This document shows positions 11,630-64,000 of a DNA stretch of 64,000 nucleotides, in pieces. The DNA lies in the NCBI RefSeq assembly GCF_006345805.1, contig NC_043015.1, forward strand, positions 8,742,001 to 8,806,000, written 5' to 3'. How positions within the stretch are numbered: position 1 is the first letter of the stretch; the number at the start of each line of letters is the position of its first letter. The position numbers and the translations under genes are program-made. Origin of the DNA: Octopus sinensis (taxonomy: Eukaryota). Under the pieces are notes generated by a model. That model was not told the DNA's origin. It did not search any database and saw only the letters and a program-made list of their open reading frames with translations.

Positions 11630-11699
<70 letters not shown>

Positions 11700-11720: not shown

Positions 11721-11721
11721 A

Positions 11722-11815
11722 TAACAGAACCGCTCACAAGTAGCGAATCCTACTTGGTAAAATTTATTGATTACTTCGTAATTAATTAGTTTTACCTTTT
11801 GTTATTATATATATG

Positions 11816-11898
<83 letters not shown>

Positions 11899-14035: not shown

Positions 14036-15302
14036 GCATATATACATATAGAAATATACATATATATGTATGTAGAGGCATATAGATGCATGTATATATA
14101 GTTATATAATTATATAAAACTGTATATTGATACATACCCACAATTATATTTATCCGTGTATGATTGTGTGGACAAACTCATGAAAGATATTTTTTTGTGT
14201 TTTAGTGTTCGGTGTAAATTTTGAACGGATCTTTGCCTTTTCTCTGTAAACTATGTCAATTTATGATCATGCACTTCTACTACATCCATTAAAGAACTGT
14301 TTGTTAAAGAAATAAAGTATAACATAGGATATATTAACCAAGAAATATTTTGGAAATCACTTAAGCAGGCACTTTAATTAATTTCTATAAATTATGCATG
14401 ACGCATAAATGAATAGTTTTTCATTGGTAAATATATACCATTTAGATAACAAGTAATAAAACAAATTCTTGAACATTACAAAATCCCATTAAGCTTTTGC
14501 ATTTGCAATCGGAATCCTTTCAGAGAAATCATTTCATTAACAAATCCAATCAGGTGTTTTAATATTCTCTACCGTTATATATCTATTCCTCTACAAGCAT
14601 ATGGTAATGACTACTGAATCCTCGTAAAATTTGTTGACGTATTTTGTCCCTGTTCTGAAAGAATGTGCAATTTATTTATAAATCCAAGTCTAAATATGTA
14701 AGAATTTGAGGTTAATAATGAATGTTCATTAGTTAACATATAATTGTATGCTTGTAAAGTACATTGTGAATGTATTTAAAGTATTTATCTGTACATTGTA
14801 TCGTGAATGTGTTTATCCGCAATTGTGCATTACTATAATTATATCTGAAGTAAACTCTCGCATTGGATTTGTACAAATACGAATTTAGTTTCATTAATTA
14901 CAATGCCTCTTGCATCCATTCTCTCTATATATATATGTGTGAGTGTGTATGTGTGCGTCTGCGTATATGTGATTGAAGGTAGGAAATGACACGTAATTAC
15001 CAACTTTTAATTGAAATATCGCAACAAGATGTTTAGTCCTTTGTATGAACTATTATTTCTATGAATTATTTCTACGCGCTTGAATGATCAAAGTCATCGG
15101 TATATATTCTGTACTTCACATATTATTTCAAAATGTCCATATGTTCCTTAATTATTGCTGCTCTTTTATTATTAGCCTCATAACCCAGAAGAAATTCATA
15201 CTCTTCAGTTTTAGAGAAGACTAGAAAACTATATTTATAATGTTTACCAGATGTGTTGACATTCTTTTCTTTTCTGCTCTAGGCATTTTTGTGGAGGTGG
15301 AG

Positions 15303-15827
15303 CAAGTCGATTAGATCGGCCCCATTACGCATATAGTACTTAATTTATCGCGCTCCAAAGGTTGAAAGGTGATGTCGACCATGGAGATATTTGAAATCAG
15401 AACGTAAAGATAGAAGAAATACCTATTTCTTTACCACCCACAAGGGGCTAAAAACACAGAGAGGACAAACATGGACAGACAAACGGATTAAGTTGATCAC
15501 ATCGACCCCAGTGCGTAGCTGGTTCTTATTTAATCGACCCCGAAAGGATAAAAGGCAAAGTCGACCGCGGAGGAATTTGAACTCAGAACGTAGCGGCAGA
15601 TGAAATAATTATTTCTTTACTACCCACAAGGGGATAAACACAGAGGACAATCAAGGACAGACACGCGGATTAAGCCGATTATATCGACCTTAGTGCGTAA
15701 TGGTACTTATTTAATTGACCCCGAAAGGATGAAAGGCAAAGTCGACCTTGGCGGGATTTTGAACGGCAGTCAAAAATACGGCTACGCATTTCGCCCGGCG
15801 TGCAAACGTTTCTGCCAGCTCGCCGCT
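15303..15827 (-). mobile_element. SINE-A with one tRNA-derived head and three tandem core units
   Basis: Head GCGGCGAGCTGGCAGAAACGTTTGCACGCCGGGCGAAATGC. Core GTCGACTTTGCCTTTCATCCTTTCGGGGTCGAT occurs three times at about 185-bp spacing. Core resembles the Meta/MESC SINE domain (recalled, not aligned). Confidence 0.85.
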
Positions 15828-16136
15828 TTACGAGGTGTGGTGATATTGCTAGTTAACTATTTCGTTTGTATTAGAACAACTATTATAGAAACACTGCTTT
15901 CCAGTGGTCTTTACATCTAGGCTTGTTATGTTTGAGTTTCAGCAAACTTTATAACATATATTACTAATGACTATTCTATGTCACTTCACAACGTGTATAC
16001 GTGTCTGTGAAAAAGAATTGAGAATACAATAATATGCGTCTGTATTTGGCGCACTTAGAATTTTTGTGCATGGGGTAGAAATCCCACCTCTTTCACATGA
16101 AGATTGGCATAAACACCGTTTAATATAAACAGGATT

Positions 16137-20365: not shown

Positions 20366-20929
20366 ATATACATACACATATACTATATAAATATGCATGT
20401 ATGTGTCTGTGTTTCGTGTGACTGTCTCTCAGTGAATACATAGAAAGTGTGCTTCCAGGGCAAGGATTCGATACACGCAAATGATTATCATTTTATCCAT
20501 GAAAGAAATCACACCTCGCATCCTCTTTCCTTGTTAAGATTCTAATGTTTTTGAAATTAGGAACTTTAAGCAAATTATACGTGAATATACATGTATTTAT
20601 CTGTTCAGTTACTGAATTATTTAATCAAATATAGTTCCGGAAACATTTAAAATATACAATATTGATTACATACAGGGATATGAACACAGTAAGGTGGCAC
20701 CGTTATTCGTATATATGAAATATATTATTTCAATGAGAAAAGTTTTGAAAAATGAAGATGCTAGTTATTAACATAAATCCATAAAAATTTTAAATAGCAG
20801 ATGAAAGAACAGATTTGAAAAAAATCGAAATCATATATTAATATACTTGATTGAAAGGAAACAAGAAAACAAAATATATGATATCAGAAAATGTCCTCGA
20901 TTTCTCACTGCGTTATAATATTTTAATAT

Positions 20930-21120
20930 TGGTGTGAAATTTTGGCGTAAGGACTGCAATTTTCGAGCAGTCTTAAGACAATTACATAGAACTTAACGCA
21001 CAGCTGGTACTTAATGATCGCGAAAGTATGAAAGGCATCTTCGATCTCATCGAAATATGAACTCAGAACATAAAACTGATGAAATGCTGCTAAATATTTT
21101 GGCCGGCGTTCTAACCGTCC
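20930..21120 (-). mobile_element. Degenerate SINE-A copy
   Basis: CTGGTACTTAATGATCGCGAAAGTATGAAAGGC...GAACTCAGAAC matches the SINE-A reverse complement. Confidence 0.65.
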
Positions 21121-21199
21121 TGTTTTCTGTGCACAATCAGAATATACTAAAATTGGTTTCACATTTCGGCACAAGGCCAGACAGTATAATAATCATCCT

Positions 21200-21625
21200 T
21201 TCTACTCTAGGCACAAGGCCCGAAATTTTGGGGACGGGGGTCCAGTAGATTGGATTGACCCCAGTACGCAACTGGTACTTAATTTATCGACTCCGAGAGG
21301 ATGAAATGCAAAGTCGAACTCGGCGGAATTTGAGCTCAGAACGTAACGACAGATGAAATACCTATTTCTTTACTACCGACAAGGGGCTAAACACACAGAG
21401 GGCAGACAAACGGATTGAGTCGATTATATCGAATGCAGTGCGTAACTGGTACTTAATTTATCGACCCCGAAAGGATGAAAGGCTAAGTCAACCACAGCGG
21501 AATTTAAACCCAGAACGTAGCGGCAGACGAAATACCTATTTCTATTTCTTTACAACCTACAAGGGGCTAAACACGGAGAGGACAAACCAGCACAGATAAA
21601 CGGATTAAGTCGATTATATCGATAC
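21200..21625 (-). mobile_element. SINE-A multimer (two full core units plus a partial third, head missing)
   Basis: Repeated ACTGGTACTTAATTTATCGAC(T/C)CCGA.AGGATGAAA.GC units; 3' tail CTAGGCACAAGGCCCGAAATTTT. Confidence 0.85.
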
Positions 21626-21764
21626 GTATATCTCCACCACTTGGTTTTGACAGAGAGATTTGATATTTTCGGAAATTATCTTTGCTTCGTTTTCGCGACA
21701 AATATTCTTTCTAGATTATGTTTTATGGATTCAGTTCAACTGTACTTGTTTTTGCCGCTGCAAG

Positions 21765-22155
21765 GCGACAAACTGGCAGAATCGTTAGGACGCCGGGCGA
21801 AATGCTTAACAGTATTTCGTTCGTCTTTACGTTCTGGGTTCAAATTCCGCCGAGGTCGACTTTGCCTTTCATCCTTTCGGGGTCGATAAATTAAGTACCG
21901 GTTACGCACTGGGGTCGATATGATCGACTTAATCCGTTTGTCTGTCCTTGTTTGTCCCCCCTGTATTTAGCCCCTTGTGGGTAGTAAAGAAATAGGTATT
22001 TCGTCTGTCTTTATGTTCTGAGTTCAAATTCCGCCTAGGTCGACTTTGCCTTTCATCCTTTCTGGGTAGATGAATTAAGTACAAGTTGAGTTCTGGGGTC
22101 GATATCATCGACTGCACCCTCGTCCAAAATTTCGGATCTTGTGCCTAGATTAGAA
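21765..22155 (+). mobile_element. SINE-A dimer (head, two cores, tail)
   Basis: Head GGCGACAAACTGGCAGAATCGTTAGGACGCCGGGCG, two cores, tail AAAATTTCGGATCTTGTGCCTAGA. Confidence 0.88.
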
Positions 22156-23779
22156 AAAAATATTTCTTTTATCACCCTTAGCTTGTATGTGGTTAATTTC
22201 TCTGTGTGACTTTCTCATAGGACTTCAGAGAGGCGTGTTTTATACGTTGAGATTTTATACAATTTAGATAAATTTCCACTATTTAAGAGCAATACGAATG
22301 GTTAGTCAATAATCTTATCTCTATTTCATTTCGAGGATGAAACTCAATGAACTGGAAAAACTCGAACGCGCTGCAGTTAAGCTTCAACAACAGTAAATTA
22401 GTGTATTTGAAGTATAACAAATCTCTTTCGAATCTTTTTTTTTTTTATATAGATAAATCGCTTCTAAAGTATCTCTGAGACACAGGGTCGTTTAAACGAT
22501 AGCTGTTTTACTAGGATGAAAAAACACAACCTAGTGGCACATTTTGCAATACAAAACAGAGCGAATATGTGCAAAATAATTCTAGAAATTTGACTTCTAG
22601 ATATTGAACCTGTAACTCTATAAATATTATTTATGATTCATGTGTGCAATATATTATTGAATTACAATATTAATTCACCTCAGATTGATGTAAAGGCGTA
22701 TATGCAGTTTATATTTACACAAAGCAATGTATAAGCAGTATCTGTTAGTTCCTTTGAAATATCCATAGACATTAAAAACATGATATATTTGTATTGGATT
22801 ACTTAATATTTTATATGACTTGAATAGTTATATATAAACGCAGTAACTTTCAAATTGTATATATTCCTTTGTATAATATTCGAGTTAAAAATATTCTTTA
22901 CATATGATGAAAATATATTCGATATTTGGTATACCATGAATAACTCCAAATACGATTAATATCATTTTTATTCAATAAAGTCGCTACTACATAAATCTCA
23001 ATAAATATATATTAACACGGTACACTGTAACTAACAATAACCTCTCTAACACATACACATGTAAAAAAAACATATACGAGAATAAATCTATACACCAGCG
23101 ACACAAACGATCTTCAGTAGAATTTTGTCATAGATAATGAAGTAAAATATATTTTGGTGAGTCACATGTTTCTGATATCAACGGCGACTTTTTTCTCTTT
23201 GACAAATCTATTTTCAGAAATTCATTTAGAAAACTCTTATAATATAGAATGTGGTAATCGCTCAGTTGTTAACCATTTGTAACAGGTTTACCTAAGTACA
23301 TAGAACATTTCATTCATTTTGATGAGATTCTCCTATGATGAAGTGACATGATACCTAGTTCAGTATTCGTTTCTTCACTAGGTTACAGCACGGGCAATAC
23401 AACTTAAGAAAAGGGGTACATAAATTAGTATAATACATAAATTAGTATAATACTAGTTCAATTATTGCTTCACGTGTTGTATAAAATATGCAAAAATTAA
23501 GTATTTTGGGGTTGTGTGTGGTGTTGGGTTGGGTGGTTTTCAGTGTAGTGTTGTCTAGTTCTTTGGCGCGTTTTATTCCAAATTCTATACAAACACTATT
23601 ACAACGCCAATATCCCTCCACCCTTATACATTTCCACCCACAACCCCAAAAATATCGAAGCATACACCACAATCACAAAAAACCTCAGTCTACTGTCAAC
23701 AGACCCAAATATGAAAAACATTATAAATACACACAAAATCCTCAAATGTAAAAGACAACACAAATCTTAAAAAAAACTC

Positions 23780-24235
23780 TTGACAAATGCCAAACTTCAC
23801 ACACCACATCCACCCACAACAGTTAATAAATGTGCACGCCCAAACTGTGGAACCTGCCCCTTCCTACTTGAAGGCTCTGAATTTATCTTCAAACAAGGAA
23901 CGAAGTTTAAAATCAAGACCAACTTCTCCTGTTCCTCCGAAAACCCTATTTACGTTCTCACATGCGCCGCTTGCCAACATAATTATGTTGGACAAACGAG
24001 CCTCCCGTTCCGTAAAAGAGTAGTGGTGCATAAAGAACAAATAAATCTCCCGGATTACCGGCAAATCCCACTGAGTGACCACATAGATTCATGCGCTAAA
24101 GACAAAAATCCCAAATTCTACATATTCCCCTTCTACCAATGTAAAGACGGAATCACCACACAGGAGAAAATTAACAAGGAGAATCTCTTTATTGAAAAAT
24201 TCAAAACGCATCTCAATATGCAAACTCCTCGTTGA
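23780..24235 (+). pseudogene. PLE GIY-YIG endonuclease domain remnant
   Basis: IYVLTC-AAC-QHNYVGQT motif with upstream CxxxxCxxC linker. Confidence 0.88.
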
Positions 24236-28521: not shown

Positions 28522-28790
28522 GCTCTATTCGAGCATGGTCGATGCCAGACCCGCCGGATTGGCTTCCGTGCTGGCGGCATGTAAATGGCACCATTCGAGT
28601 GTGGTCGATGGCAGTACCGCCTGCCCTACCGGCCCCCATACACTCTGGGAGCGGTTGGCGTTAAGAAGGGTATCCAGATGAAGAAAACTTGCCAGATAAA
28701 ATTGGAGTCTGATACAGACTCCTGCCTTGCCAGTACGCAGTTCAACTTTCCAACCCATACCAGCGTGGAAAGCTAACTGATGATGGTGAT
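28522..28790 (+). mobile_element. SINE-D fragment with (GAT)n-type tail (possibly Ceph-domain/RTE-tail type)
   Basis: Tandem CGAG(C/T)(A/G)TGGTCGATG motifs, GGTTGGCGTTAAGAAGGGTATCCAG, and CCAACCCATACCAGCGTGGAA before GAT repeats. Domain assignment recalled, not aligned. Confidence 0.6.
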
Positions 28791-28792
28791 GA

Positions 28793-29030
28793 CGGCGAGC
28801 TGCCAGAAACGTTAGCACGACAGGCGAAATGCGAAATGCGTAGCCATATTTCGTCTGCCGTTACGTTCTGAGTTCAAATTCCGCCGAAGTCGACTTTGCC
28901 TTTCATCTTTCCGAGGTCGATTAAATAAGTACCAGTTACGCACTTGGGTCGATATAATCGACTTAATCCATTTGTCTGTCCTTGTTTGTCCTCTCTGTGT
29001 TTAGCCCCTTGTGGGTAGTAAAGAAATAGA
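28793..29030 (+). mobile_element. Monomeric SINE-A ending at the Tx1-like tail
   Basis: Head, one core, then ...TTTAGCCCCTTGTGGGTAGTAAAGAAATA. GATGATGGTGAT on both sides. Confidence 0.88.
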
Positions 29031-50070: not shown

Positions 50071-50617
50071 GATGAAGCAGTCACTATTGTTGGGCTTTAG
50101 TAATCCTAAGCAAAACTAGAGTAGCATAGAAATCTCACTCACCACGCTTTGGGGGTGGTTATCTTCCCTGTCATTTAAGGGACTCTCTTCCTTGCGGGTA
50201 ATTGTTTTTAACTCTCATTTGTTGCAATGCCGGTCCTAATCTGCAATGTCAGTTGAAATTAGTGGCAATTGAAATTTTCCCTTTCGGTTTCGTATTGCAT
50301 ATAACCGCCTTTTCGCTTATATATACGTGTATGTGCCTGCGTTTTGTGTGTGTACGTGTGTATTTGTGTGTGTGTGTGCGCTCGTAATCCTAACGGCTAT
50401 TCACTCCCAAACATCGAAAACTGTATCTCGGCATCTACGTTCTCAGCGGAAATATCATCGTATAATGTGGTTAACCGATAGGTGAAGCACTGGCATTTGC
50501 TCCACCCCGGGTCAAACTAAACTTGTGAAAAATACTGTCTAATAATTCGTCCTGAAATCCTTAAAGCTCTTGCCCACTCTAAGTAAAACCCCATAACCGA
50601 ATCCCAGATATACATAC

Positions 50618-50840
<223 letters not shown>

Positions 50841-51188
50841 ACTTTCTTTTATTAGCCACACAGGGCTGAATACAGAGGGGACAAATACAAATGCAGAGCT
50901 TTTCTTTTCGAGGGTGGAAAAAATAAAAAATGTAAGATTGCGATCAAAAGGGATCGAGAGGAGGAAAAAAAAAGGAAAAAAAGGAAAATCGTGTATCACA
51001 GAAATAATGGTGTAAACATTGATATAACAAGATTGGGTTCATCCGTGGGAAGAAAAGCCTACAGAAAAGACCACGGGAACCCCAGTCAGGGAGGAAATAA
51101 ACACATGAGGTCAAAAATGCTCTCTTTCTTTCTTTTTTACGATCTACAGGATCATGCTCAAAATGGTTTCGCACCATCTTTGCAACAT

Positions 51189-54100
51189 TCACCCGCGAGA
51201 CAAAACTTCCCTCTCCATTCTCACCTTCCTTTTCAAGTGGTACTTGAAAAAGTTGATGAGCGACTGGCCAGAGAGGTAAGTGTTTGTCTCTAATCCTTTC
51301 GCTCGAGTCCACCACACACATTCTTTCACCATGGCCACCAGTACGATGAAAACTGCCTTGCCTTCCCGGTTGGGGGAAGGGGGCGGAGCAATTCTCACGA
51401 TAGACTCGGCCGATAGGCGGATTCGTCCCACACGTGACAGCAGCCGTTCGGCATAAGCCCACAGGTCGGAAATGGTTGGACATTGCACGAGTGCGTGCAG
51501 AACGGTTTCGTCGCTCTGACCGCATCTCGGGCAAGTCGATCCAGTGTGTCTGGAACCGTGTCTGTAGAGCTTATCCCGAACAGGTAATGCTTCTCGATAG
51601 CACTGCCAGGCCAGGGATCTTTGGTGATTGTTCATAGGTCCCGGCCCGAAAGTTGTCCTGAACAGGCGGGTCAGGTGTTCCTCGTCGACGCCCAGACTCT
51701 GCCCGAGTTCGTCGTCGCACCTCCCCTCCACTAATTCTCTATAGAATGCCTTTGTTGTGATGGAGTCGCACAAGTTCGATCCCGGACGGCAGAGTTGCTT
51801 GAGAGCGACGCGACACTCGCGGTGCCATTCGCCTAGCCTCGGTCTCTGCTTGATCCATGACTGTAGTTCGTCCAAGGAGACGAGCTGCGGGAAAGCGCGC
51901 CGCACAAAAGGCGGCCACCCCTGTTCACCGTTGTCTATGAAGCGCCGGAGATGTCGCAGTCTCAGCGCATGTCTGCGCATCATCAACCACGGCATGCCCA
52001 GCCCTCCATTTAGCGGGTGTTGGCAGCAAATGGATCGCCTAACCATCGGAACGTTTCCCTTCCACAAGAAGCGGAAGAGTATGCGTTCCAGTTTGGTGAT
52101 GATAGGGTCGGGACAAGGCACGACGGTCAGACGATACTCGATGACGGATGCGATGTACGCGTTCGCCACCTCCGCCCGACCTTTTAGGGATAGCTTTCTC
52201 TCAGTCCATTTCTGGGTGAGAGTAGCCACCCTAGTCGTTATCTCGCCCCAGTTCTTCTCCATTTGGAGGTCCGGCCGAACCAGACCCCGAGCAAATTAAC
52301 CGGTCCGTCCGTCCAGCGTCCCACGATGGAGACGCTGTTGGACGGCATGGGCTTGCTTCTCCAGGTGCCGAGCCGCAAGCCCACTGACTTTTCCCGGTTA
52401 ATTTTTGCTCCCGTTACCGCTTCGTATTCTTTCAGTGTCTCGCCGACCAGCTCGATGTGCTCGTAGCTCGACACTATGACGGTGACGTCATCCGCGTATG
52501 CAGACACGCTCCTCCCGCATCCCAGCTCTCGTGGGATGCCCCTCAGCGTCGCCAGTTTCCGCAGTAGTGGCTCAAGAGTCAGTACATACAGCAGCGATGA
52601 GAGGGGGCATCCCTGACGAACCGAACGCATGATGTTAAAAGGTCTGGATAGATGACCATTTACGCGAACTACTGAGCGGATGCCGCTGTATAAGGCAGCG
52701 ATCCAACCGCGGAAAACTGGACCGAAACCAGCCGCTTTGAGGACAGCCTCCAAGTAGTGATGGTCTACCCTATCGAAGGCTTTTGATTGATCCAAATTGA
52801 TCAGCGCCCCACCCATGCCAGGATTTTTAACTACCCTGTCTATGATGTAGCGCATCAGATGGAGGTTGTCATGAATACTTCTACCCGGCACGGCGCATGT
52901 TTGCGCCTTGTCGATTAGTTTCTTGATGACAAGCGCCAACCTCTCGGCTAACACCTTGGCCAAAATTTTCAAATCTGCGTTGAGCAGAGTGATGGGCCTG
53001 AAATTATCTATGACGTCCCCCTTGTTTGGGTCTTTCTTGATCAGTGCCACTGCTCCTCGCTTTACAAAAGCAGGAATACTCCCGTTCTGCTGCCAGTTGC
53101 AGTAGACAGCTGCCAAGACGCCTCCAAACAAGTCTGGCATATGAAAATAAAATTCGTAGGGCAGCCATCCAAGCCTGGTGACTTGTCTCTCGCGCAGCCT
53201 ACCATCGCATCCTGTACATCCGCAGCTGTGATAGGCTTTTCACAAGACTCCACCTCCCTTGCTGAGAGTCGTGGCAAGGCATGCAGGTAGGCACTAAAGT
53301 CCACTCTGCTTTCTGACTCACCACTTGTCCCAAACAGTTGGGTGAAGTGTTGTTGAAAAACCCCACACATCCTTTTAGGCTCGAGCAATTCGCGCCCCTG
53401 TTCATCTATAAGAGACTTGATGGTGGCTCTGTTGCCTCGTTGCGTCTCCACCACTCGGGCCTCTGGGCGGCTCCAACTCCTTCGTTCCTCAGAGCACGCA
53501 TCCTAGCTCTGACAACGCATCCCTCGTGTTGGTCGAGGGCCAATCTCGCCGCCAGTACGTTGGACGCGATGCCAGTTCTAAGTGCCTCTTCTAAAACCTT
53601 AACTAATTCTCCCTCTATTCTATTTCGGTCTAATGCTAGGGCTCTACTGTATCTGACTGATTCTGCTTTAATCGCTTTTTTTAGGGCATACCACCATCTG
53701 TTGTTGATGATGGTACCCGTCAAAGCTCTCTTAACTAATGTGCTGATCCGGTCCCTGTAAACCTGTCGTGCTGTAAACGACGCGTTCAGTTTCCAGTAAC
53801 CAGGACCCTGCCTATGTGTCTTATCTAAGTCAAGTGTACAAGTCACAAACTTGTGATCTGTGTAACTGACTATATGAAATTGTGGACAACCTACACTGTT
53901 TTTATCTATTGTCCTACAGAATACTCTGTCTAAGTATGATCTGGACGACCCGATGCGGTTACTCCATGTCCACATTGGCACATTCGGGTGGTCCAGTCGG
54001 TACCTGTCAGACAGTTGGAAACGTCTGAGCAGGTCTTTGAGGCATTTGCATCCCCTTCTATTGCTATCTCTGCCCACGTAGTCTAGATGCGTGTCCAGGG

Positions 54101-54533
54101 TGGCATTCCAATCCCCCACTAAAAGTAAAGGACGAGACGTTCCCATGAAAGACTCTAGACGTCGAAAGAAATCTGGTCGGCCTGTTAAGGACGGAGCATA
54201 AACTGCTATCAGTCGAAAAGCACACTCATTGCTGCCATCGACATCCAAAACGACCAGCCTACCCTCCGGGTCTAGGAAATTTGCTCTTACTTTGAGATCC
54301 AGACTCTTCCGGATAAGCACCGCGGTTCCACCTCCGCCCATTCTCGGTAGACACGGAGAAAAATAAATGTTGAAATGTGTACCGAAAATGTGCTGGAGTG
54401 CCCGCAAGCTGTGGAGTCTGGTCTCACTGATGGCTATGATATTCAGATTTAGTGACTTGATGTCATTTAACAGGTAGCCTTGTTTCCAAGGCGACCCCAA
54501 GCCACGTACATTTATACTACCTATTCTGAGCAT
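51189..54533 (-). pseudogene. A1 ORF2: AP endonuclease, reverse transcriptase and C-terminal zinc finger, disrupted
   Basis: MLRIGSINVRG, SETRL, VGDWN, SYLDR, TDHK; DKSPGLDG, NFRPITLLNAD, DQSKAFDRVDH, VRQGCPLS, YADD; CPRCGQSDETVLHALVQC. Frameshifts near 53455, 53165 and 52270; ~20-bp deletion near 51192. Confidence 0.95.
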
Positions 54534-54802
54534 GTTCCGATAAAAGTGCAAAAAAGGAAAAGGAGAGAAAAGGTTACTTGTTTTTCGAAGTTCTTTGTCT
54601 TTCACCTCACGGTCTTCTTCTATGAGGCTTTTATACAGTTTTTTTCGATGAGTACTTTTGAAATCTCCCTACGGCATCAGGTAAGAGATTTCAGGGTGCT
54701 GTATGTGTTCGTGTCACGTGTATTATTTTAATGTGTTGTGGTGGGTTTGTATGTGGGTGGTTACTTGTTTTTATGTCGTTTTCAGTATGTTAGTGTTTGA
54801 AC

Positions 54803-56720
54803 CTAATGTGTTCCATTAGGTCGTGGTTGTTTGGTGTTTATGGCTGTCAACATTTTTGGGGGGTTTGATGATGGTGTGTTTGTGTTGATGTGTGTGTTTT
54901 CTGTGGATGTTTTTGTTTCGGGAGTGGTGTATCTTCCCGCTTTGTTGTTATTTTTTCTTTTCTTTTTTTTTTTCCCCCTTTTTCTCTCCCCCCTGTGGCT
55001 ATTTGCCAATCTTCCGTGTCTTCTTCGTCTAATGACAGATCAGACGAATCGGAGTCTGGAAGAGGGAAAGATTGGGGTCTATTGTCGACTGTGTTGTTTT
55101 TGTTGTTGGTGTTGGTTGGTGAGCGTTTGGTTGTGGTGTATGCGGTTTTGGATGTGGGGTTTGGGTATTTTGTGTTTGAGTGATTGTGGGTATTGTTGTG
55201 TTGTTTAGGGTCTCAATTTGTGGGATTTGGAGTTGTAATTGTTTCTTCATTTTTGCTGGGTGTCTTTTTGGCAGATGTCCTTGGTTTGGGAGTTGGTATA
55301 TTCTTGTTGTTGTTGTTGGTGATGCTGCTTCTGTTCTTGGTGCTGCAGTTGGTGTGGTTGTTTGTTTGGTGAGTTTTGTTCCTGCAAAAAGTGGTGTGGG
55401 TAGTAAACCTTGTTTATTTGTTTTTGTTTCCGCTGCTGTTGTTGTTGCTGTTGTTTTCTTGCGGCAGATTTGCAGTCTTTTTTGAGGTGTTGCTCACTTG
55501 CCGCATATGTAGCAACGTGGTCTTCTGCCATCGACGACCACATATAACTTGTGGTCGTCTGATACACATATCTGGGTGGGTATTTTTTTATATCCTCATG
55601 ATGTATATGTAGAAGAAATTCTATTTTGTGTCCCACCCAGTTTTTATTCTCTGTGACTGTGGTTTCCAAAATAGTATAGTTTTTCGCCATTTTTACGCAT
55701 AAGGCCTTTACAAGCCATAGACTATTGGCTATTTTGGGACATTGTTTAGAGTGATCTTAGTCACTTTCTGTCCCCGATAGCTTGGTGTAAGTTGGAGTTC
55801 ATCTGAGTGAAGAGTTAGCGTTGAGAAATGTCTAGCTAACTCTTCGGTTTGTAGAAAACAACTTGTATGTGGGCAAATTTGTTCCACCAGGTTACATATT
55901 CTTTGTGATCCCAGATGGGTTTCAAGCACTTCTCTATTTTGCTTGTGTTGGCCTTCTCTGGGATTTTTGTTTTTTTGTTAACTATTTTATAAATGATTGT
56001 TCGTCTTTTTTCATTTTCCAAAATATCTTCTGGTATGTTTATTTGTACTATACCTTCTGATTCTGTTATTTTGATGTTCGTGTCCTGTATTTGTTGAGCC
56101 GTAAAGTATATTGTTGTTTTTTTTTCTTTAATCGCCTCAGCGAAATTTGTTGTTGTTTTGTTATTGTTGTTGCTTGTGGTGGTTGTTTGTTGGCTGCAGT
56201 TTGTAAAATTGGTGTGTTTGGTTCGATCGTGCTAGTAGGAAGGGGTGGAAAATTGCCTGCGTACTTTAGTCCTGCACTAGGGCAAAATTCGACATTTCGT
56301 TTGCTTGTCGTCGTTATTTTTTCACTTGTTGGGTGATGGAGTGAGCAGTGGTTGAAGGGAATTGTTGTTGTCGTCGTTGTTGTTGTTGTTATTGTCGTTT
56401 CTGTGACGGCGGTGGTGTTGGTAGTATTAGTAGCATTGACGGCACGGTCTTTGGTGGCGGTGATGGTGATGTTTTTTATGGTGGCGATATCTTTAGTAGG
56501 GATAGCAGTTTTAGTAGCAGATTCTGCCATGGTGTTGGTGGTGGTGGGTGGACTCACTGATGGTGTTGACGGTGCTTGGCCTTGCGACCTTTATTTTGTA
56601 TTTGTTGCTGTTGGTGGTGGGTGGAGTTGTCAGGTCGGCGTATGCTAACAGAGCATCCTGCTTTTCTGTTTCTGCGTCACGCTTCACTTGCAACTCAGCC
56701 TCGTGGTGGCCAGTGGCCAT
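54803..56720 (-). pseudogene. A1 ORF1 (Thr/Lys-rich, CCHC zinc knuckle), disrupted
   Basis: MATGHHEAELQ start. LYVVVDGRRPRCYICG-x-EQHLKKDC with a 1-bp insertion in the knuckle. Several stops and shifts; end position approximate. Confidence 0.8.
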
Positions 56721-56940
56721 TTTGGAAATAAAATGGCTAAATGAAACCACGAAGGCTATGAGGATTTTTTTCTTTAATTTTGCCCACAAGGGGCAAAATT
56801 TTGTGTCGATATTTATCAAAGGTTTACAGTGGATGTTGTTGTTGCACAACTTTTAAGCACAAAATGTTTGTCAATATACACTTTTAAATGGTCAAAATAA
56901 ATGATTACCTTCGGAGCTGAAACGACATCACATCCGTCAG

Positions 56941-57197: not shown

Positions 57198-57768
57198 TGT
57201 TTCTTTATTAGCCACACAGGGCTGCACACAGATAGAACAAATTACAAGGTAGAGCTTTTCTTTTGAAGGTTTAAAAAAAAAAAAAATAGTAATAAAATAA
57301 CAAATAAAATAAAATAAAAAAGGGAGGTCGATCAAAAGGGATCGTAAAAGGAGAGAAAGAGGACAAACAAAGGGGGGTTAAAAAAAAGGGGGAGAGGAAA
57401 AAAAATTGATCAATAGGGATCGTTATCACAGAAATGTCAATATGAAGTGTAAAGGGGAGGACAGGTGAGGTTTACCCGTGGAAAGAAAAGCTACGGAAAA
57501 GACCACGGTAACCTCGGTCAATGAAGTCACATGTTATATTTCTTCTTTTTTTTAGCAAATAAGCAACTCTCTGTATTAATTTTTACGGTTCATAGAATCA
57601 TAGTCAGGGTGGCTTCGTCATTCATACGTGCCATCCTTGCTACATTCACCCATCTTTTTTTTAAAACATTCACTAGACAAACTTGCCTCTCTACTACTCT
57701 CACTTTCTTCATCGATACTTGAAGAAGTGAGATGAGAGATTGACCAGAGAGGAAAGTGTTTGTCTCTA
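57198..57768 (-). mobile_element. 5'-truncated Tx1 copy, subfamily B (B2)
   Basis: 3' UTR plus ORF2 end (RWVNVARMARMNDEATLTMIL*); homologous to 58690-59250. Confidence 0.92.
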
Positions 57769-57872: not shown

Positions 57873-57873
<1 letters not shown>

Positions 57874-58610
57874 CTTTCTTTCTTTTTTTTTTTTTTTTTT
57901 ATTAGCCACACAGGGCTGAATACAGAGGGGACAAATACAAATGCAGAGCTTTTCTTTTCGAGGGTGGAAAAAAATAAAAAATGTAAGATTGCGATCAAAA
58001 GGGATCGTGAGAAGGAAAAAAAAAGGAAAAAAAGAAAATCGTGTATCACAGAAATAATGGTGTAAACATTGATATAACAAGATTGGGTTCATCGTGGGAA
58101 GAAAACCTACAGAAAATACCACGGGAACCCCAGTCAGGGAGGAAATAAACACATGAGGTCAAAAATGCTCTCTTTCTTTCTTTTTTACGATCTACAGGAT
58201 CATGCTCAAGATGGTTTCGCACCATCTTTGCAACATTCACCCATCTTTTTTTTAATCTTTTCGCGAGACATAACTTCCCTCTCCATTCTCACCTTCCTTT
58301 TCAAGTGGTACTTGAAAAAGTTGATGAGCGATTGGCCAGAGAGGTAAGTGTTTGTCTCTAATCCTTTCGCTCGAGTCCACCACACACATTCTTTCAACAT
58401 GGCCACCAGTACGATGAAAAAAAACTGCCTTCCTTCCCGGTTGAGGGAAGGGGGCGGAGCAATTTCACGATAGACTCGGCCGATAGGCGGATTCGTCCCA
58501 CACGTGACAGCAGCCGTTCGGCATAAGCCCACAGGTCGAAATGGTTGGAAATTGCACGAGTGCGTGCAGAACGGTTTCGTCGCTCTGACCGCATCTCGGG
58601 CAAGTCGGTC
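57873..58610 (-). mobile_element. 5'-truncated Tx1 copy, subfamily A (A3)
   Basis: Near-identical to 50841-51540, with a longer A-run after AATAA. Confidence 0.93.
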
Positions 58611-58689: not shown

Positions 58690-59084
58690 TGTTTCTTTAT
58701 TAGCCACACAGGGCTGCACACAGATAGAACAAATTACAAGGTAGAGCTTTCTTTTGAAGGTACTAAAAAAAAAAAAAAAAAAAAAGGGAAGGGGAAGGTT
58801 CGATCAAAGGGGATCGTAAAAGGAGAGAAAGAGGACAAAAATAAAGGGGGTTAAAAAAAAAAAAAAAAAAAGGGGGGGGGGGAGAAAAAAATGATCAATA
58901 GGGATCGTTATCACAGAAATGTCAATATGAAGTGTAAAGGGGAGGACAGGTGAGGTTTACCCGTGGAAAGAAAAGCCTGCGGAAAAGACCACGGTAACCT
59001 CGGTCAATGAAGTCACATTTTATATTTCTTTATTTTTTTTTTTTTTTTTTTGCAAATAAGCAACTCTCTGTTTTCGATTTCTGG

Positions 59085-62000
59085 GTTCATAGGACTATGC
59101 TCAAGGTGGCTTCGTCATTCAGTACGTGCCATTCTTGCTACATTCACCCATCTTTTTTAAAAACATTCGCTAGACAAACTTGCCTCTCTACTCTCACTTT
59201 CCTTTTCAAGTGGTACTTGAAGAAGTTGATGAGAGATTGACCAGAGAGGAAAGGATTTGTCTCCAATCCTTTCAGACGCGTCCACCAGATACATTCTTTC
59301 GCCATAGCCACAGGATGATGAAAATAGCTCTTCCTTCCCGTTTGAAGGAAGGAGGCGTGACAATATTGACGATAGACTCAGCTGATAAACCGACTCGTCC
59401 CACACGTGACAGCAGTTGTTCGACATAAGCCCACAGGTCGGAAATTGTTGGACACTGAACGAGTGCGTGCAGAACGGTTTCGTCGCTCTGACCGCATCTC
59501 GGGCAGGTCGCCCCGTGTTTCTCGAGCCGTGTCTGTAGAGCTTATCCCGAACGGGTAGCGCTTCTCGGTAGCACTGCCAGGCCAGGGATCTCTGGAAGTT
59601 GTCCCTGGGCCCTGGCCCGAAAGTCGTCCCGAACAGGCGGGTCAGGTACTCCTCGTCGACGTCCAGGTTCGCCCCGAGCTCGTCGTCGTACCTCCCCTCC
59701 ACTAAACCCCTATAGAATGCTTTGGTTGTTTGAAGTCACTTAAGGTCGACCAGGACGCAGAGTTGCTTGAGAGCAACGCGACACTCGCGGTGCCATTCGC
59801 CCTTCCTCGGCCTTTTTTTGATCCACGACTGCAGTTCGGTCATGGAGACGAGCTGCGGGAAAGCGTGCCTCACAAACGGCGACCACACCTGTTCACCGTC
59901 GTCTACATAGAGCCAGAGATGTCGCAGTCTCAGCGCGTGTCTGCGCATCATCAACCACGGCATGCCCAGCCCTCCTTTTAACGGGTGTTGACAGCAAATG
60001 ATCGCCTGACCATCGGGACGCACCATCTTTCCACAAGAAGCGAAAGAGGATGCGTTGTAGTTTGGTGATGGTAGGGTCGGGACAAGGTACGACGGTCAGG
60101 CGGTAGTAGATGACGGACGCGATGTACGTGTTCGCCACCTCCGCTCGACCTTTTAGGGACAGTTTCCTCTCGGCCCATTGCCGGGCGAGAGTGACCACCC
60201 TACTCGTTATCTCGTTCCAGTTCTTCTCCACTTGGAGGTCCGGACCAAACCAGACCCCGAGCAACTCAACCGGGCCGTCGGTCCAGCGTCCCACGACGGA
60301 GGCGCTGGTGGACGGCATGGGCTTGCTTCTCCAGGTGCCTAGTCGCAAGCCCACTGACTTTTCCCGGTTGATTTTCGCTCCTGTTCACCGCTTCGTAGTT
60401 TTTCAGTGTCTCGCCGACCAGCTCGATGTGCTCGTGGCTAGACACTATGACGGTGACGTCGTCCGCGTATGCAGACACGCTCGTCCGCATCCCAATTCTC
60501 GCGGGATGCCCCTTAGAGTCGCCAGCTTCCGCAGTAGTGGCTCAAGAGTCAATACGTATAGAAGCGCCGAGAGGGGCATCCCTGACGGACCGAACGTGCA
60601 ATGTCGAAAGGTCTCGATAGATGTCCATTTACGCGAATTACCGAACGGATGCCTCTGTACAAGGCAGCTATCCAGCCGCGGAAGACGGGACCGAACCCAG
60701 CCGCTCTCAGGACTGCCTCCAAGTATCGATGGTCTACCCTATCAAAGGCTTTTGATTGATCAAGTTGATCAGGCCCCACCCATGGCAGGTTCGTTAACTA
60801 CCCTGTCTATGATGTAGCGCATCAGATGGAGGTTGTCATGGATGGTCCGGCCTGGCACGGCGCATGTTTGCGCCTTGTCGACCAGTTTCTCGATGACAAG
60901 CGCCAACCTCTTGGCTAGCACCTTGGCCAAAATTTTCAAGTCTGCATTAAGCAGAGTGATGGGCCTAAAGTTATCTATTACATTTCCCTTGTTTAGATCT
61001 TTCTTCAGCAGTGTTACGGCTCCTCGGCTCACAAAACCAGGAATGCTCCCGTTTTGCTGCCAGTTGCAGTACACCGCCGCCAAGAGATCTCCAAACAAGT
61101 CTGGCATACAATTGTAAAGCTCGTAGGGTAGACCATCCAAACCCGGTGATTTGTCCCTCGAGCATTCTGCCATCGCTTGCCGCACTTCCGCCGCCGTGAT
61201 GGCACCTTCGCAGCACCCTGCCTTTCTTGTCGAGACTCGTGGTAGGCTATGTAGGTAGGCACTGAAGTCCACCCTACGTTCTTGCCCTCCACTCGTTCCG
61301 AACAGTCGGGCAAATGCTGCTGAAAGGCCTCACACATTTTACTTGGCTCGAGCAATTCGCGCCCCTGTTCATCTACCAGTGACCGAATGGTGGCTTTGTT
61401 GCCCTGTTGCGCCTCTGCCACCCGGGCCTCTCTCGCGGCTCCAACACCTTCGTTCCTTAGAGCACGCATCCTAGCTCTGACAGCACATCCTTCGTGTTTG
61501 GCGTTGAAGTGTTGGTCGAGGGCCAACCTCGCCGCCAAAACGTCGGATGCGATGCCGCTTCTAATTGCCTCTTCTAGCTTCTTAACTAGCTCACCCTCTA
61601 CTCTATTTCTATCTATGGCTAGTGCTTTGCTGTACCTAATCGCTTCTGCTTTTACTGCTCTCTTGAGGGCAAACCACCATTTGTTGTTGATGATGGCTCC
61701 CGTCAAAGCCCTCTTTACTAGTGTGCTAATCCGGTCTCTGAAAACTTGTCTCGATGGGAAAGACGCGTTTAGTTTCCAGTATCCGGGACCCTGCCTAAGT
61801 GTCTTACCTAAGTCTAGCGTACATGTCACAAGTTTGTGATCCGTGTAGCTGACTATGTGGAATTGTGGACATCCTATGCTATCTCTATCTACTGTCCTAC
61901 ACAGTATCCTATCTAGATACGATCTCGACGACCCGATGCGGTTGCTCCATGTCCACGTTGGCGCATTCGGGTGGTCTAGTCGAAACCTGTCAGACAGTTG

Positions 62001-62513
62001 AAAGCGTCTGAGCAGGTCTCTGAGGCATTTGCATCCCCGTCTATTCCTATCTCTACCCACGTAGTCTACATGCGTGTCCAAGGTAGCATTCCAATCCCCC
62101 ACTAAGAGTAAAGGACGAGACGTTCCCAAGAAAACTTCTAGACGTTGAAGAAATCCGCCCGACCTGTTAAGGGCGGTGCGTAAACTGATACGAGCCGAAA
62201 AGCGCACCCATTGCTGCCGTCGACATCCAGGACGACCAGTCTACCCTCCGGGTCTACGAATATTGTCCTTACATTGAGATCCAGACTCTTGTGAAAAAGT
62301 ACCGCGGTGCCACTACCGCCCATTCTCGGCAGACAGGGGGAAAAATAAATGTTGAACTGTCCGCCAACATGGTCTTTAGGGCCGCGGATTGTGGAGTCTG
62401 GTCTCGCTTATGGCTATGATTTCTAACTTATGTGACTTTATGTCATTTAAGAGGTACCCTTGTTTCCAAGGGGACCCCAAGCCACGCGCATTTACACAAC
62501 CAATCTTGATCAT
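59085..62513 (-). pseudogene. B4 ORF2 (APE-RT-zinc finger), many frameshifts
   Basis: MIKIGCVNARGLGSPWKQG, VGDWN, TDHK, DKSPGLDGLP, NFRPITLLNAD, SKAFDRVDH, SAYADDV. Confidence 0.93.
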
Positions 62514-62700
62514 AGTTCTAATGAATTAGAATACAGAGGTTACTTACTGCTCGAAAGTTTTTGTTTTTGCTTTCTCCTCCGTTGGTTTGTCCTCGAGAAG
62601 ATCCCAGTACAGTTTCTTTGTGAGATATTTTTGGCATTTACCACCACCGCACTGGGGAAAATGCCTTTGAGTGTGTGGTGCAGACTTTTGGAGATGTGTA

Positions 62701-64000
62701 TTATTTTGATGTGGTCTGGTGGTGTTGTGTATGGTGGTTGTTTGTTTTTATGTCATCTTCTGTTATGTTTGTTTTTGATTGGATGTATTCCATCAAATTT
62801 GTGTTTTTGGTGTCTATGGCTGTGAGCATGTTTGCTGTATATGTTTTTGTGGTGTTGGTGTGGCTGTTGTTTGCGTTGGGTTTTGAAATGTCTTCGGGAG
62901 ATGTATTTCCCCCTGCTTTGTTCGTGTTTGCATTTGGTTTGGTTGTGTTTCTGCTCTTTATTTTCCTTCTTTTTGTAGCTATTTGCCATTCCTCACTGGT
63001 TTCGTCTTCCGACGAAATTTCTGAGGAATCAGAAGGGGGTAGGGGTATGTTGTGGGCTTCTATGTATGTCTGTGTAAGTGGTTGTGTTGTTGTTTTCGTT
63101 GTTGTTGGTTGTTGAGTGTTTGTGTGTGTTGAGTGCGGTATAAGGGATGGGGATCAGTTTGTGTGTGTTTTTTTTGTTTTTCTGTTCCTTTGGGTTTTGC
63201 TGTTGATGGTAGTGTTGGTATTTTTCAGGTGTCGAGTGGTTTTTGGTTGATGACGGATTAGCTTGGTGTGCTTCTCTTGTCGTCTTCTGTGTTGATGGTG
63301 GTGTGGTAGTAGAGCTTTTTTCCGGAGTGCTTTGGTTGTGGTAGTGGTTGTTGTTGTTGCTCTTGGTGTGCAGTGGTTGGGCACGTCTTTTTCAAGTGTG
63401 TTTCGCTTCCACACAAATAGCAGCGTGGTCGCCTGCCCTCTACCACTATATAGAGTTTGTAGCCTCCTGGCAGTTCTATAGCGGTGGGTATCTTCTCTCT
63501 TGCTGCTTCATCCAATTGAAGCAGGAATTCGATTGATTGCCCACATAGTCTTTCTCTCCTAGAACCGCGATTTCCAGGATGTTTGTCTCTGACATTGTCT
63601 CTGACATTTCAAAGCAGATGGCAGAGACCACACCATTGTGTTTCGACATCAAATGGTATGTTTTTTATTTGGACTTTCGTGACCCTTTTGTTTAAATAGA
63701 CTGGTATCATTACCAAGTCGTCCGAATGTAGCTCCAATGTGGAAAACGTTTTGCTAAACTTTCGTTGAGGAAACGTACTTGGACTGTACCAAATTTGTTT
63801 CCCCAACTGATATATTCCTTGGAGTCCCATACAGGACGAAGGCATTTATCGATTTTTTCCCTGCGGCATTTTCTGTTCTTCTTGTTTTTTTTGTTTATTA
63901 CTTTTATAAATTATGTTTTTTTTTGCGTGTTTTCCACGATGTGTTGTGGAATATGAAGGTGCAATTGTCTCCTTCTTTGGAGAAGAGTGCCTTTGTGCGG
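62701..64000 (-). pseudogene. B4 ORF1 3' part with CX2CX4HX4C knuckle
   Basis: LYIVVEGRRPRCYLCGSETHLKKTC (knuckle 63381-63422); frameshifted. Confidence 0.85.

What the first reader, a model, noticed from the sequence alone, without database searches (positions are those of the whole stretch)
21951..21992. SINE-A unit 3' end matches the 3' terminus of the Tx1 LINE: candidate Tx1-driven SINE
Seen: SINE TTTGTCCCCCCTGTATTTAGCCCCTTGTGGGTAGTAAA-GAAA against LINE A1 sense end (reverse complement of 50843-50885) TTTGTCCCCTCTGTATTCAGCCCTGTGTGGCTAATAAAAGAAA, 36 of 43 columns identical by hand alignment. The motif recurs in SINE-A units at ~15425, 15612, 21363, 21545 and 28985, and the monomer at 28793-29030 ends exactly there. 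Known: SINEs borrow the 3' end of their partner LINE. Inference: SINE-A was mobilised by this Tx1 lineage, an uncommon partner clade for tRNA SINEs.
Basis: partly seen in the sequence, partly recalled or inferred. Interest (0 to 1): 0.8.

Follow-up and report, generated by a model that had tools for sequence, protein, structure and literature searches.

The report
Octopod SINE shares LINE 3' tail
A short repeat (SINE) in this octopod genome ends with the same roughly 50-base tail as an L1/Tx1-type LINE nearby, and the same pairing shows up more sharply in Argonauta, so the SINE most likely copies itself with that LINE's enzymes: a real but fairly ordinary SINE/LINE partnership with an unusual LINE clade.

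Summary
It is far beyond chance. The local score is 27 against 8.5 +/- 1.7 in 5000 shuffles, and the best of 8056 background windows scores 19.

The LINE has an endonuclease, a reverse transcriptase and a zf-RVT domain, and its closest solved structure is human L1 ORF2p. Four tandem copies lie on the minus strand, each followed by (TATC)n. The last ~55 nt is the only conserved part of its 3' UTR.

One SINE-A monomer (28791-29028) ends at the motif and has a perfect 12-bp target-site duplication.

The decisive support comes from an Argonauta hians locus. The orthologous LINE and the homologous SINE there share a tail at 36 of the last 38 columns (z 14-16).

A 4-bp hairpin in the tail is kept through two compensatory flips.

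Caveats:
- Tx1 rather than L1 is inferred only by elimination.
- No tool detects a tRNA in the SINE head.
- Most SINE-A units are internal parts of multimers that end in a variant tail B.
- The LINE copies sit in (TATC)n, and the SINE does not.

Verdict: a stringent-type SINE/LINE pair, and a new member of a known kind.

The parts
21951..21992 (+). SINE-A 3' tail named in the finding (TTTGTCCCCCCTGTATTTAGCCCCTTGTGGGTAGTAAAGAAA). It holds the hairpin GCCC/CTTGT/GGGT followed by AGTAAAGAAA.
21763..22160 (+). Composite SINE array 3. A nearly full SINE-A unit (21763-21996) is followed by a unit that starts at monomer position 55 (21997 onward) and switches after about position 171 to tail B (22112-22160, ...GGATCTTGTGCCTAGATTAGAAA).
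21197..21623 (-). Composite SINE array 2, 5'-truncated. It runs: unit fragment (positions 157-238), unit 55-237, then unit 55 to about 171 plus tail B (21197-21245).
15256..15826 (-). Composite SINE array 1. It runs: full SINE-A unit, unit 55-237, then unit 55 to about 178 plus a degenerate tail B and an AGAAA-rich end. The whole array is flanked by an imperfect 13-bp direct repeat, CACAYCTSGTAAA, at 15827-15839 and 15243-15255.
28791..29029 (+). SINE-A monomer ending ...GTAGTAAAGAAATA(G). It is flanked by a perfect 12-bp target-site duplication, GATGATGGTGAT, at 28779-28790 and 29029-29040 (11 bp if the G belongs to the element).
50843..56940 (-). LINE copy A1, about 6.1 kb. It has a degenerate ORF1 with a broken CCHC knuckle at 55472-55514. 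ORF2 is frameshifted at least three times, with APE at 53406-54605, RT at 52238-53140 and zf-RVT at 51189-52262. The 3' UTR is 50843-51188. The conserved tail is 50843-50897. The 5' end abuts (TATC)n.
57200..57766 (-). LINE copy F1, a 5'-truncated 3' fragment of the A2 subfamily with the same tail. (TATC)n lies on both sides.
57873..58610 (-). LINE copy F2, a 5'-truncated 3' fragment of the A1 subfamily (92.7% identical). Its tail has an expanded A-run. (TATC)n lies on both sides.
58692..64000 (-). LINE copy A2 (about 80% identical to A1 across ORF2). It runs off the window end. ORF1 carries an intact CX2CX4HX4C knuckle at 63381-63422. The tail is 58692-58745.
50610..50842 (-). (TATC)n on the LINE sense strand, directly 3' of the A1 tail. 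Equivalent arrays lie at 56941-57199, 57767-57872 and 58611-58691, each between two LINE copies.

Best explanation
SINE-A is a non-autonomous retroposon. Its last ~50-55 nt are homologous to the 3' terminus of an L1-superfamily (probably Tx1-clade) LINE lineage that lives in octopod genomes. The shared segment is the LINE's conserved 3' end: a 4-bp stem with a 4-6-nt loop, followed by an A-rich TAA(T/G)AAAGAAA(T) stretch. The most likely mechanism is the 'stringent' mode. The LINE ORF2 protein recognises this 3' element on its own RNA, the SINE RNA presents the same element, and so the SINE is reverse-transcribed at a nicked target by target-primed reverse transcription, leaving target-site duplications.

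Shown here: the homology, its terminal position in both elements, its conservation within the LINE, a TSD-flanked monomer ending at the motif, and the same SINE/LINE tail pairing in a second octopod.

Inferred: recognition by ORF2p and actual trans-mobilisation.

The four LINE copies in the window are old, frameshifted and embedded in (TATC)n. They are relatives of the driver rather than the driver itself. Tail B, which ends the multimeric arrays, looks like a second variant of the same tail family: the same hairpin with one flipped pair.
For: - Terminal match in the window: score 27 against shuffle mean 8.5, sd 1.7, 0 of 5000; best of 8056 background windows is 19. The only non-SINE hits of the SINE tail in 64 kb are the four LINE termini.
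- The SINE tail lies within the diversity of the LINE's own tails. A1 and A2 are about 80% identical over the last 55 columns. SINE vs A1 is 42 of 55 and SINE vs A2 is 39 of 50.
- The LINE tail is under constraint: 80% identity in the last 55 columns between subfamilies A1 and A2, against 35-45% in the 165 columns upstream. It is conserved to the Argonauta LINE (score 29, z 10). A related LINE in L007 ends ...CTTGTGGCCAAT.
- The monomer at 28791-29028 has a perfect 12-bp TSD and ends at the motif.
- Independent replication: Argonauta hians L005 holds the orthologous LINE (ORF2 67% identical). One of its 3' UTR copies ends TTCTGTGTCGGCCCTTGTGGCTAATAAAGAAATCTAT. The locus also holds at least 6 SINE copies with a body homologous to SINE-A (72-76% identity) that end TTCTGTGTTCGGCCCTTGTGGCTAATAGAGAAATCTAT. 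That is 36 of 38 columns at the end and 60 of 74 overall, with scores 39-42 against shuffle mean about 10 (z 14-16). One copy has the TSD CTATTTCAAGGAA.
- Hairpin: the stem is AGCC or GGCC with GGCT in the LINEs and the Argonauta SINE, GCCC with GGGT in window SINE-A, and GGGC with GCCT in tail B. These are two compensatory double changes. 85% of cells pair, 0 of 500 shuffles reach this, and slid controls reach at most 50%.
- The LINE has a full retrotransposition domain set: APE, RVT_1 and zf-RVT, with an ORF1 CCHC knuckle.
Against: - No functional test was possible. Shared tails show common origin, not mobilisation.
- In the window the extreme ends differ. The LINE ends ...AAAGAAA(GT/CA)(TATC)n in 4 of 4 copies. 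SINE-A ends ...AAAGAAATAG, has no (TATC)n and is not inserted in (TATC)n. If the endonuclease is (TATC)n-specific, these LINE subfamilies did not place the SINE.
- Window identity is only about 80%. Only this one LINE family could be compared, so a better-matching LINE may exist elsewhere in the genome.
- The hairpin is short. Predicted folding energies of the tails are not better than shuffles for the SINE (z 0.05) or for LINE A2 (z -0.9), and only modestly so for LINE A1 (z -2.2). The two compensatory changes are two events, not many.
- Only one of six SINE-A tail copies in the window is a demonstrable insertion end.
Confidence: 0.75

Rival explanations
1. The tail is homologous, but the direction or dependency is different. 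Either the LINE lineage picked up its 3' end from the SINE (for example by template switching), or both took it from a third element. SINE-A is then actually mobilised by another LINE (RTE, CR1 and Dong-R4 are abundant in octopus) that carries a similar tail.
For: - Only one LINE family was available for comparison in the window.
- Identity in the window is about 80%.
- The terminal repeats differ: (TATC)n against TAG.
- Octopus genomes hold many active LINE clades.
Against: - The tail is conserved in the LINE across two window subfamilies, two Argonauta copies and, in part, L007, and it is continuous with the LINE's 3' UTR.
- In Argonauta the SINE and LINE tails are nearly identical right to the last base, AAATCTAT. 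Co-evolving partners predict this. A one-off capture does not.
Confidence: 0.15
2. The SINE-A 'units' are mainly a tandem repeat with a 183-186-bp period that spread by unequal crossing-over or replication slippage. The tail motif is an internal repeat boundary, not a retrotransposition signal.
For: - Five of six motif copies lie at internal unit boundaries.
- The junction is constant: tail end joined to monomer position 55 (AAATAG|GTATTTCG), four times.
- Tandem Repeats Finder reports a 186-bp period at 15304-15764.
- The arrays end in tail B.
Against: - The monomer with a perfect 12-bp TSD ends exactly at the motif.
- Argonauta SINE copies end at the homologous motif, one with a TSD.
- Array 1 as a whole has flanking direct repeats.
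- The multimers are equally well explained by template switching, or by tail-directed insertion with microhomology between GAAATAG and GAAATGC(G/T)TAG (inference).
Confidence: 0.07
3. The match is chance similarity between two pyrimidine/purine-patterned, A-rich ends.
For: The segment is short (43 nt) and ends in an A-rich stretch.
Against: - 0 of 5000 shuffles and 0 of 8056 background windows reach the score.
- The match lies at the exact 3' end of both elements.
- It is reproduced independently in Argonauta with z 14-16.
Confidence: 0.01

Closest known systems
Stringent-type SINE/LINE pairs with a common 3' tail (Ohshima and Okada; eel UnaSINE1/UnaL2 is the tested example, which I cite from my own knowledge; the survey of 58 pairs is in PMC3747384)
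   Same: - The SINE's last ~50 nt are homologous to the LINE's 3' terminus.
- The tail is the conserved part of the LINE 3' UTR.
- It holds a small stem-loop with compensatory changes.
- Copies have TSDs.
   Different: - The partner clade is L1/Tx1 rather than L2, CR1 or RTE.
- In the window species the terminal short repeat is not shared: LINE (TATC)n against SINE TAG.
- No functional assay exists.
L1-clade stringent pairs: maize and sorghum ZmSINE2/ZmSINE3 with LINE1-1_ZM, and Chlamydomonas SINEX-3_CR with L1-1_CR (PMC3747384)
   Same: - An L1-superfamily LINE with a conserved ~45-50-nt 3' end forms a hairpin that is shared with SINEs.
- Compensatory mutations occur in the stem.
- The tail is much less diverged than the rest of the element.
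   Different: - Those are plants and algae; this is an animal (a cephalopod).
- The stems there are longer and more stable (-10 to -17 kcal/mol reported) than the 4-bp stem here.
- This LINE is associated with a microsatellite and with tandem arrays.
SINEU mobilised by Tx1-Mar in crocodilians (Kojima 2015, PMC4494074)
   Same: A SINE is proposed to be driven by a Tx1-clade LINE. Template switching is invoked for composite structures.
   Different: - The SINEU link rests on a shared target preference (Mariner-N4_AMi) and shared snRNA-derived 5' heads, not on a shared 3' tail.
- Here the 3' tail is shared, while a shared target preference is not seen in the window.
Microsatellite-specific Tx1 LINEs: Kibi (TC)n, Koshi (TTC)n, and crocodilian Tx1 in (TTCC)n/(TTTC)n (PMC4494074)
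   Same: All four LINE copies lie head-to-tail inside one (TATC)n tract, and the 5'-truncated copies have the repeat on both sides.
   Different: - The repeat unit (TATC) is not one of those reported.
- The Argonauta relatives end in a single ATCTAT and are not in a microsatellite. The tract may therefore be the LINE's own expanded terminal repeat rather than a target.

Membership tests
SINE/LINE pair with common 3' tail (stringent type) | The SINE 3' end is homologous to the extreme 3' end of the LINE, beyond chance. | tested here: met
   (score 27 vs 8.5 +/- 1.7; 0 of 5000). Argonauta: (z 14-16).
SINE/LINE pair with common 3' tail (stringent type) | SINE copies end at the tail and are flanked by target-site duplications. 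| tested here: met
   The monomer 28791-29028 has a perfect 12-bp TSD. An Argonauta copy has the TSD CTATTTCAAGGAA. Only one clean case exists in the window; the other tail copies are internal to arrays.
SINE/LINE pair with common 3' tail (stringent type) | The tail holds a conserved stem-loop supported by compensatory changes. | tested here: inconclusive
   A 4-bp stem is kept with two double changes. 85% of cells pair, 0 of 500 shuffles reach this, and slid controls reach at most 50%. However, the stem is very short and folding energies are not better than shuffles for the SINE or for LINE A2, and only modestly so for LINE A1.
SINE/LINE pair with common 3' tail (stringent type) | The SINE and LINE share the same terminal short repeat. 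| tested here: inconclusive
   Not met in the window: LINE (TATC)n against SINE ...GAAATAG. Met in Argonauta: both end AAATCTAT.
SINE/LINE pair with common 3' tail (stringent type) | The LINE protein mobilises the SINE RNA in trans, and this depends on the tail. | not testable with these tools
   Needs a retrotransposition assay.
Tx1 clade of non-LTR retrotransposons | L1-superfamily ORF2 architecture: APE endonuclease, reverse transcriptase and a C-terminal Cys-rich motif. | tested here: met
   PF03372, PF00078 and PF13966. The best solved relative is human L1 ORF2p at E 1e-60, against R2 at 1e-20. ORF1 has a CX2CX4HX4C knuckle at 63381-63422.
Tx1 clade of non-LTR retrotransposons | The RT groups with Tx1 references rather than with L1 proper in a phylogeny. 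| not tested
   No named Tx1 or L1 reference sequences could be retrieved (searches gave no such names). Indirect support: mollusc and octopus surveys report L1-Tx1/Tx1 as the L1-like clade.
Tx1 clade of non-LTR retrotransposons | Target-sequence preference (many members). | tested here: inconclusive
   4 of 4 copies lie in one (TATC)n tract. Related LINEs in L002, L004 and L005 are also tandem. One locus only, and the repeat may be the element's own tail.
tRNA-derived SINE (SINE2) | The 5' head is recognisably derived from a tRNA. | tested here: not met
   ARAGORN finds 0 genes in the window and in L005. Rfam gives no tRNA match at the gathering score, nor at E up to 10 on the monomer, nor at E up to 1 on L005.
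tRNA-derived SINE (SINE2) | Internal pol III A and B boxes. | tested here: inconclusive
   By reading only: TGGCAGAATCG matches TRGCNNAGTGG at 9 of 11 positions, and GGTTCAAATTCC matches GGTTCGANNCC with one extra base (arr3 and the monomer). No statistical test was done.

The most novel reading that the evidence does not exclude
An octopod-wide, long-lived partnership exists in which a Tx1-clade LINE with stringent recognition of a 3' stem-loop drives the large SINE family, in both tail A and tail B forms, behind the octopus-specific SINE expansion. The RNA 3' end also guides insertion next to earlier copies or into matching (ATCT)n tracts. That would explain both the head-to-tail LINE arrays and the SINE multimers. 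It would be the first animal tRNA-like SINE tied to Tx1 by a shared tail.
Probability: 0.3. Interest if true: 0.6.

Novelty: new member of a known kind. Interest (0 to 1): 0.4.

Why it matters
SINEs make up about 8-12% of octopus genomes, and their expansion is octopus-specific. None of the papers I could search names the LINE that drove it.

A tail shared with an L1/Tx1-type LINE, conserved between this species and Argonauta, gives a concrete and testable candidate. It would also add an animal case to the few L1-superfamily LINEs known to use stringent 3'-end recognition; the others are in maize, sorghum and Chlamydomonas. The mechanism class itself, SINEs borrowing LINE tails, is textbook. 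The value is therefore for cephalopod genome biology and repeat annotation, not a new principle.

Tried and rejected
- Protein names to place the LINE in Tx1: two homology searches and one cluster look-up gave no Tx1 or L1 names, only 'hypothetical protein' from Argonauta hians, Acanthosepion pharaonis and JGI. The clade stays unassigned by direct test.
- Looking up a window ORF (51189-52262) or P0177 in the assembly index: not on record.
- L001, L006 and L003, contigs of close or distant LINE relatives: L001 and L006 end before the tail, and L003 has an unrelated tail ending in an ATCA-type repeat at the contig end.
- tRNA detection in SINE heads with ARAGORN and Rfam: negative.
- Thermodynamic support for a tail hairpin: not significant for the SINE. 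Only the comparative pair counts support it.
- A partner LINE for tail B in the window: none. A resemblance of tail B to the 3' UTR end of a 44%-identical LINE in assembly ERZ21867824 (27 of 31, z 5.3) did not pass blastn-short at E 0.05, so I keep it only as a weak lead.
- TSDs for arrays 2 and 3: none convincing.
- Literature: no paper in the searchable library describes an octopus SINE/Tx1 tail pair. Repbase entries could not be consulted.
- Chance similarity: rejected.

Full report
**1. Observation**

The two strings are in the window as quoted. 21951-21992 (+) reads TTTGTCCCCCCTGTATTTAGCCCCTTGTGGGTAGTAAAGAAA. The reverse complement of 50843-50885 reads TTTGTCCCCTCTGTATTCAGCCCTGTGTGGCTAATAAAAGAAA. 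I count 36 identical columns of 43.

A blastn of the monomer 28793-29030 against the whole window returns the SINE copies. For monomer positions 193-234 it returns only four other places, ending at 50843, 57200, 57894 and 58692, all on the minus strand.

The local alignment of a SINE-A consensus tail (from six units) scores 27 against either LINE subfamily: 42 of 55 columns vs A1 and 39 of 50 vs A2. Dinucleotide shuffles give 8.5 +/- 1.7, and 0 of 5000 reach 27. The best of 8056 background 65-nt windows scores 19.

**2. The LINE**

The four hits are the 3' termini of four copies of one LINE, all on the minus strand.

| Copy | Coordinates | Notes |
|---|---|---|
| A1 | 50843-56940 | about 6.1 kb |
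| F1 | 57200-57766 | 5'-truncated, A2 subfamily |
| F2 | 57873-58610 | 5'-truncated, A1 subfamily, 92.7% identical |
| A2 | 58692 to beyond 64000 | about 80% identical to A1 over ORF2 |

- ORF2 is frameshifted. It carries Exo_endo_phos, RVT_1 and zf-RVT domains.
- Its best solved relative is human L1 ORF2p at E 1e-60; R2 proteins follow at 1e-20.
- ORF1 of A2 has an intact CX2CX4HX4C knuckle at 63381-63422. A1 has a broken copy at 55472-55514.
- The best named protein relatives are from Argonauta hians (67%) and Acanthosepion pharaonis (51%), so the window comes from an octopod.
- The LINE is in the L1 superfamily. Assigning it to Tx1 rests only on published surveys in which L1-Tx1/Tx1 is the L1-like clade reported for octopus and other molluscs. 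I could not obtain Tx1 reference sequences for a phylogeny.

Every LINE copy ends ...GGCTAATAAA(A)GAAA, then GT or CA, then (TATC)n. The truncated copies have the repeat on both sides, so the four copies sit head-to-tail in one microsatellite tract. A (TATC)n tract with no LINE also exists at 1111-1341.

**3. The tail is the constrained part of the LINE**

In a global alignment of the A1 and A2 3' regions, the last 55 columns are 80% identical, and 26 of the last 27 match. The 165 columns upstream are only 35-45% identical.

The tail is also conserved to the Argonauta LINE (score 29 against 10.2 +/- 1.9). A 66%-identical relative in L007 keeps part of it (...CTTGTGGCCAAT).

**4. The SINE**

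The monomer is 28791-29028. It is flanked by a perfect 12-bp direct repeat, GATGATGGTGAT, and ends ...GTAGTAAAGAAATA(G). At least one copy was therefore inserted with tail A as its 3' end.

The other tail-A copies are internal. There are three arrays: 15256-15826 (-), 21197-21623 (-) and 21763-22160 (+).
- Each has the form [unit 1-237][unit 55-237]n.
- The last unit leaves the SINE-A sequence after about position 171.
- That last unit ends in a different tail B...CCCAAAATTTCGGGCCTTGTGCCTAGAGTAGAAA.
- The junction AAATAG|GTATTTCG recurs four times.
- Array 1 as a whole is flanked by an imperfect 13-bp repeat.

Tail B keeps the same hairpin position and the ...TAGAAA end, so it looks like a second variant of the same tail family.

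ARAGORN and Rfam do not recognise a tRNA in the heads. Only approximate A-box and B-box matches can be read.

**5. Replication in a second octopod**

The Argonauta hians locus L005 (GCA_054771915.1) holds the orthologous LINE (gene at 10001-12013).
- Its 3' UTR ends at 12254-12285. A second, 5'-truncated copy made only of 3' UTR follows, ending TTCTGTGTCGGCCCTTGTGGCTAATAAAGAAATCTAT at about 12655.
- The same 22 kb holds at least six SINE copies whose body is homologous to SINE-A (72-76% identity). Their tails read TTCTGTGTTCGGCCCTTGTGGCTAATAGAGAAATCTAT.
- SINE against LINE there gives 36 of the last 38 columns and 60 of 74 overall. Scores are 39-42 against about 10 +/- 2 (z 14-16).
- One SINE copy has the TSD CTATTTCAAGGAA.
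- Two adjacent SINE copies are arranged so that the second follows the first one's tail directly.

The SINE/LINE tail sharing is therefore not peculiar to this window. In each species the SINE tail resembles that species' LINE tail, as expected for co-evolving partners.

The Argonauta tails end in a single ATCTAT. This suggests that the (TATC)n of the window LINEs is an expansion of the element's own terminal repeat. Target preference is the alternative reading.

**6. Structure**

In 21 tails (window SINE-A, tail B and LINE; Argonauta SINE and LINE) a 4-bp stem with a 4-6-nt loop sits at the same place.

| Tail group | 5' arm | 3' arm |
|---|---|---|
| LINEs and Argonauta SINE | AGCC or GGCC | GGCT |
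| Window SINE-A | GCCC | GGGT |
| Tail B | GGGC | GCCT |

- These amount to two compensatory double changes.
- On the MAFFT alignment, 85% of cells pair, 0 of 500 column shuffles reach the observed pairing or covariation score, and slid controls give at most 50%.
- The stem is short, and folding energy alone is not significant for the SINE or LINE A2 tails, and only modestly so for LINE A1. I call the hairpin likely but not proven.

**7. Mechanism**

The best explanation is a stringent-type SINE/LINE pair. The LINE ORF2 protein recognises the terminal stem-loop plus the A-rich end, and the SINE RNA carries the same element and is copied by target-primed reverse transcription. This step is inferred.

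The multimers could arise in two ways:
- by template switching of the RT from position 55 of one SINE RNA to the 3' end of another;
- by insertion next to an existing tail, with 5' joining at the microhomology between GAAATAG and GAAATGC(G/T)TAG.

Both are inferences.

The window LINE copies are old, broken and bound to (TATC)n, while SINE-A is not in (TATC)n. The direct driver was therefore probably a sister subfamily.

**8. Comparison with what is known**

- SINE/LINE tail sharing is classical.
- L1-clade stringent pairs are known in maize and sorghum (ZmSINE2/3 with LINE1-1_ZM) and in Chlamydomonas (SINEX-3_CR with L1-1_CR). Those also have a conserved ~45-50-nt hairpin-forming end.
- A Tx1-driven SINE has been proposed for crocodilian SINEU, on shared target preference rather than a shared tail.
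- The 2013 survey of 58 pairs lists no Tx1 partner and no octopus SINE.
- No searchable paper describes this pair. Repbase could not be checked.

I file it as a new member of a known kind, of moderate interest for cephalopod genome biology.

Noticed in passing
window 50610-64000 (-): Four copies of the LINE (two long, two 5'-truncated, from two subfamilies) lie head-to-tail. Each pair is separated only by (TATC)n tracts of 20-65 units. Related LINEs in other assemblies are also tandem (L002, L004 and L005). This suggests insertion directed to the element's own tail or to a microsatellite.
   Followed up: partly
window 15256-15826 (-), 21197-21623 (-), 21763-22160 (+): The SINE multimers have a constant junction (tail A end joined to monomer position 55) and a last unit that ends in a different tail B (...GGGCCTTGTGCCTAGAGTAGAAA). 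Arrays 2 and 3 face each other in inverted orientation, about 140 bp apart.
   Followed up: partly
L004 8101-8183 and 1665-1747; L002 2667-2749 and 9094-9176: A LINE with 44% ORF2 identity in assembly ERZ21867824 has a 3' UTR end, CCCCTCCCCCAAAACTTCAAGGCCTTGTGCC..., that resembles tail B (27 of 31, z 5.3). It is not significant by blastn-short. It is a weak lead to a tail-B partner.
   Followed up: partly
window 20900-21130 (-); also 3233-3277 and 10622-10663 (+): There are further degenerate relatives of the SINE body. The first has yet another 3' end (...CCTTACGCCAAAATTTCACACCAAT). A similar GGCCTTGTGCCGAAATGTGAAACCAAT fragment lies at about 21150-21185 (-).
   Followed up: no
window 23780-24235 (+): This ORF has a weak GIY-YIG nuclease domain hit (E 1e-4, just above the cut-off). 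It may be a remnant of a Penelope-like element.
   Followed up: no
window 17410-19790 (+): Two overlapping long ORFs (355 and 490 aa) have no Pfam match. Their nature is unknown.
   Followed up: no
protein P0177: A 466-aa protein that is 64% identical to this cephalopod LINE ORF2 C-terminus is deposited at NCBI as 'MAG: zinc-binding domain-containing protein [Herbaspirillum sp.]'. This is probably host-DNA contamination of a bacterial bin.
   Followed up: no
L005 14830-15310 (+): Two Argonauta SINE copies lie in direct tandem. The second is flanked by CTATAG(G/A)(C/T)CAGCAC, which includes the end of the first copy's tail. It is an example of insertion right at an earlier tail.
   Followed up: partly
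window, whole: The sequence is extremely rich in microsatellites: 74 Tandem Repeats Finder rows, many of them (TA)n, (CA)n, (GAT)n and (GAA)n. One (TATC)n tract at 1111-1341 has no LINE next to it.
   Followed up: partly
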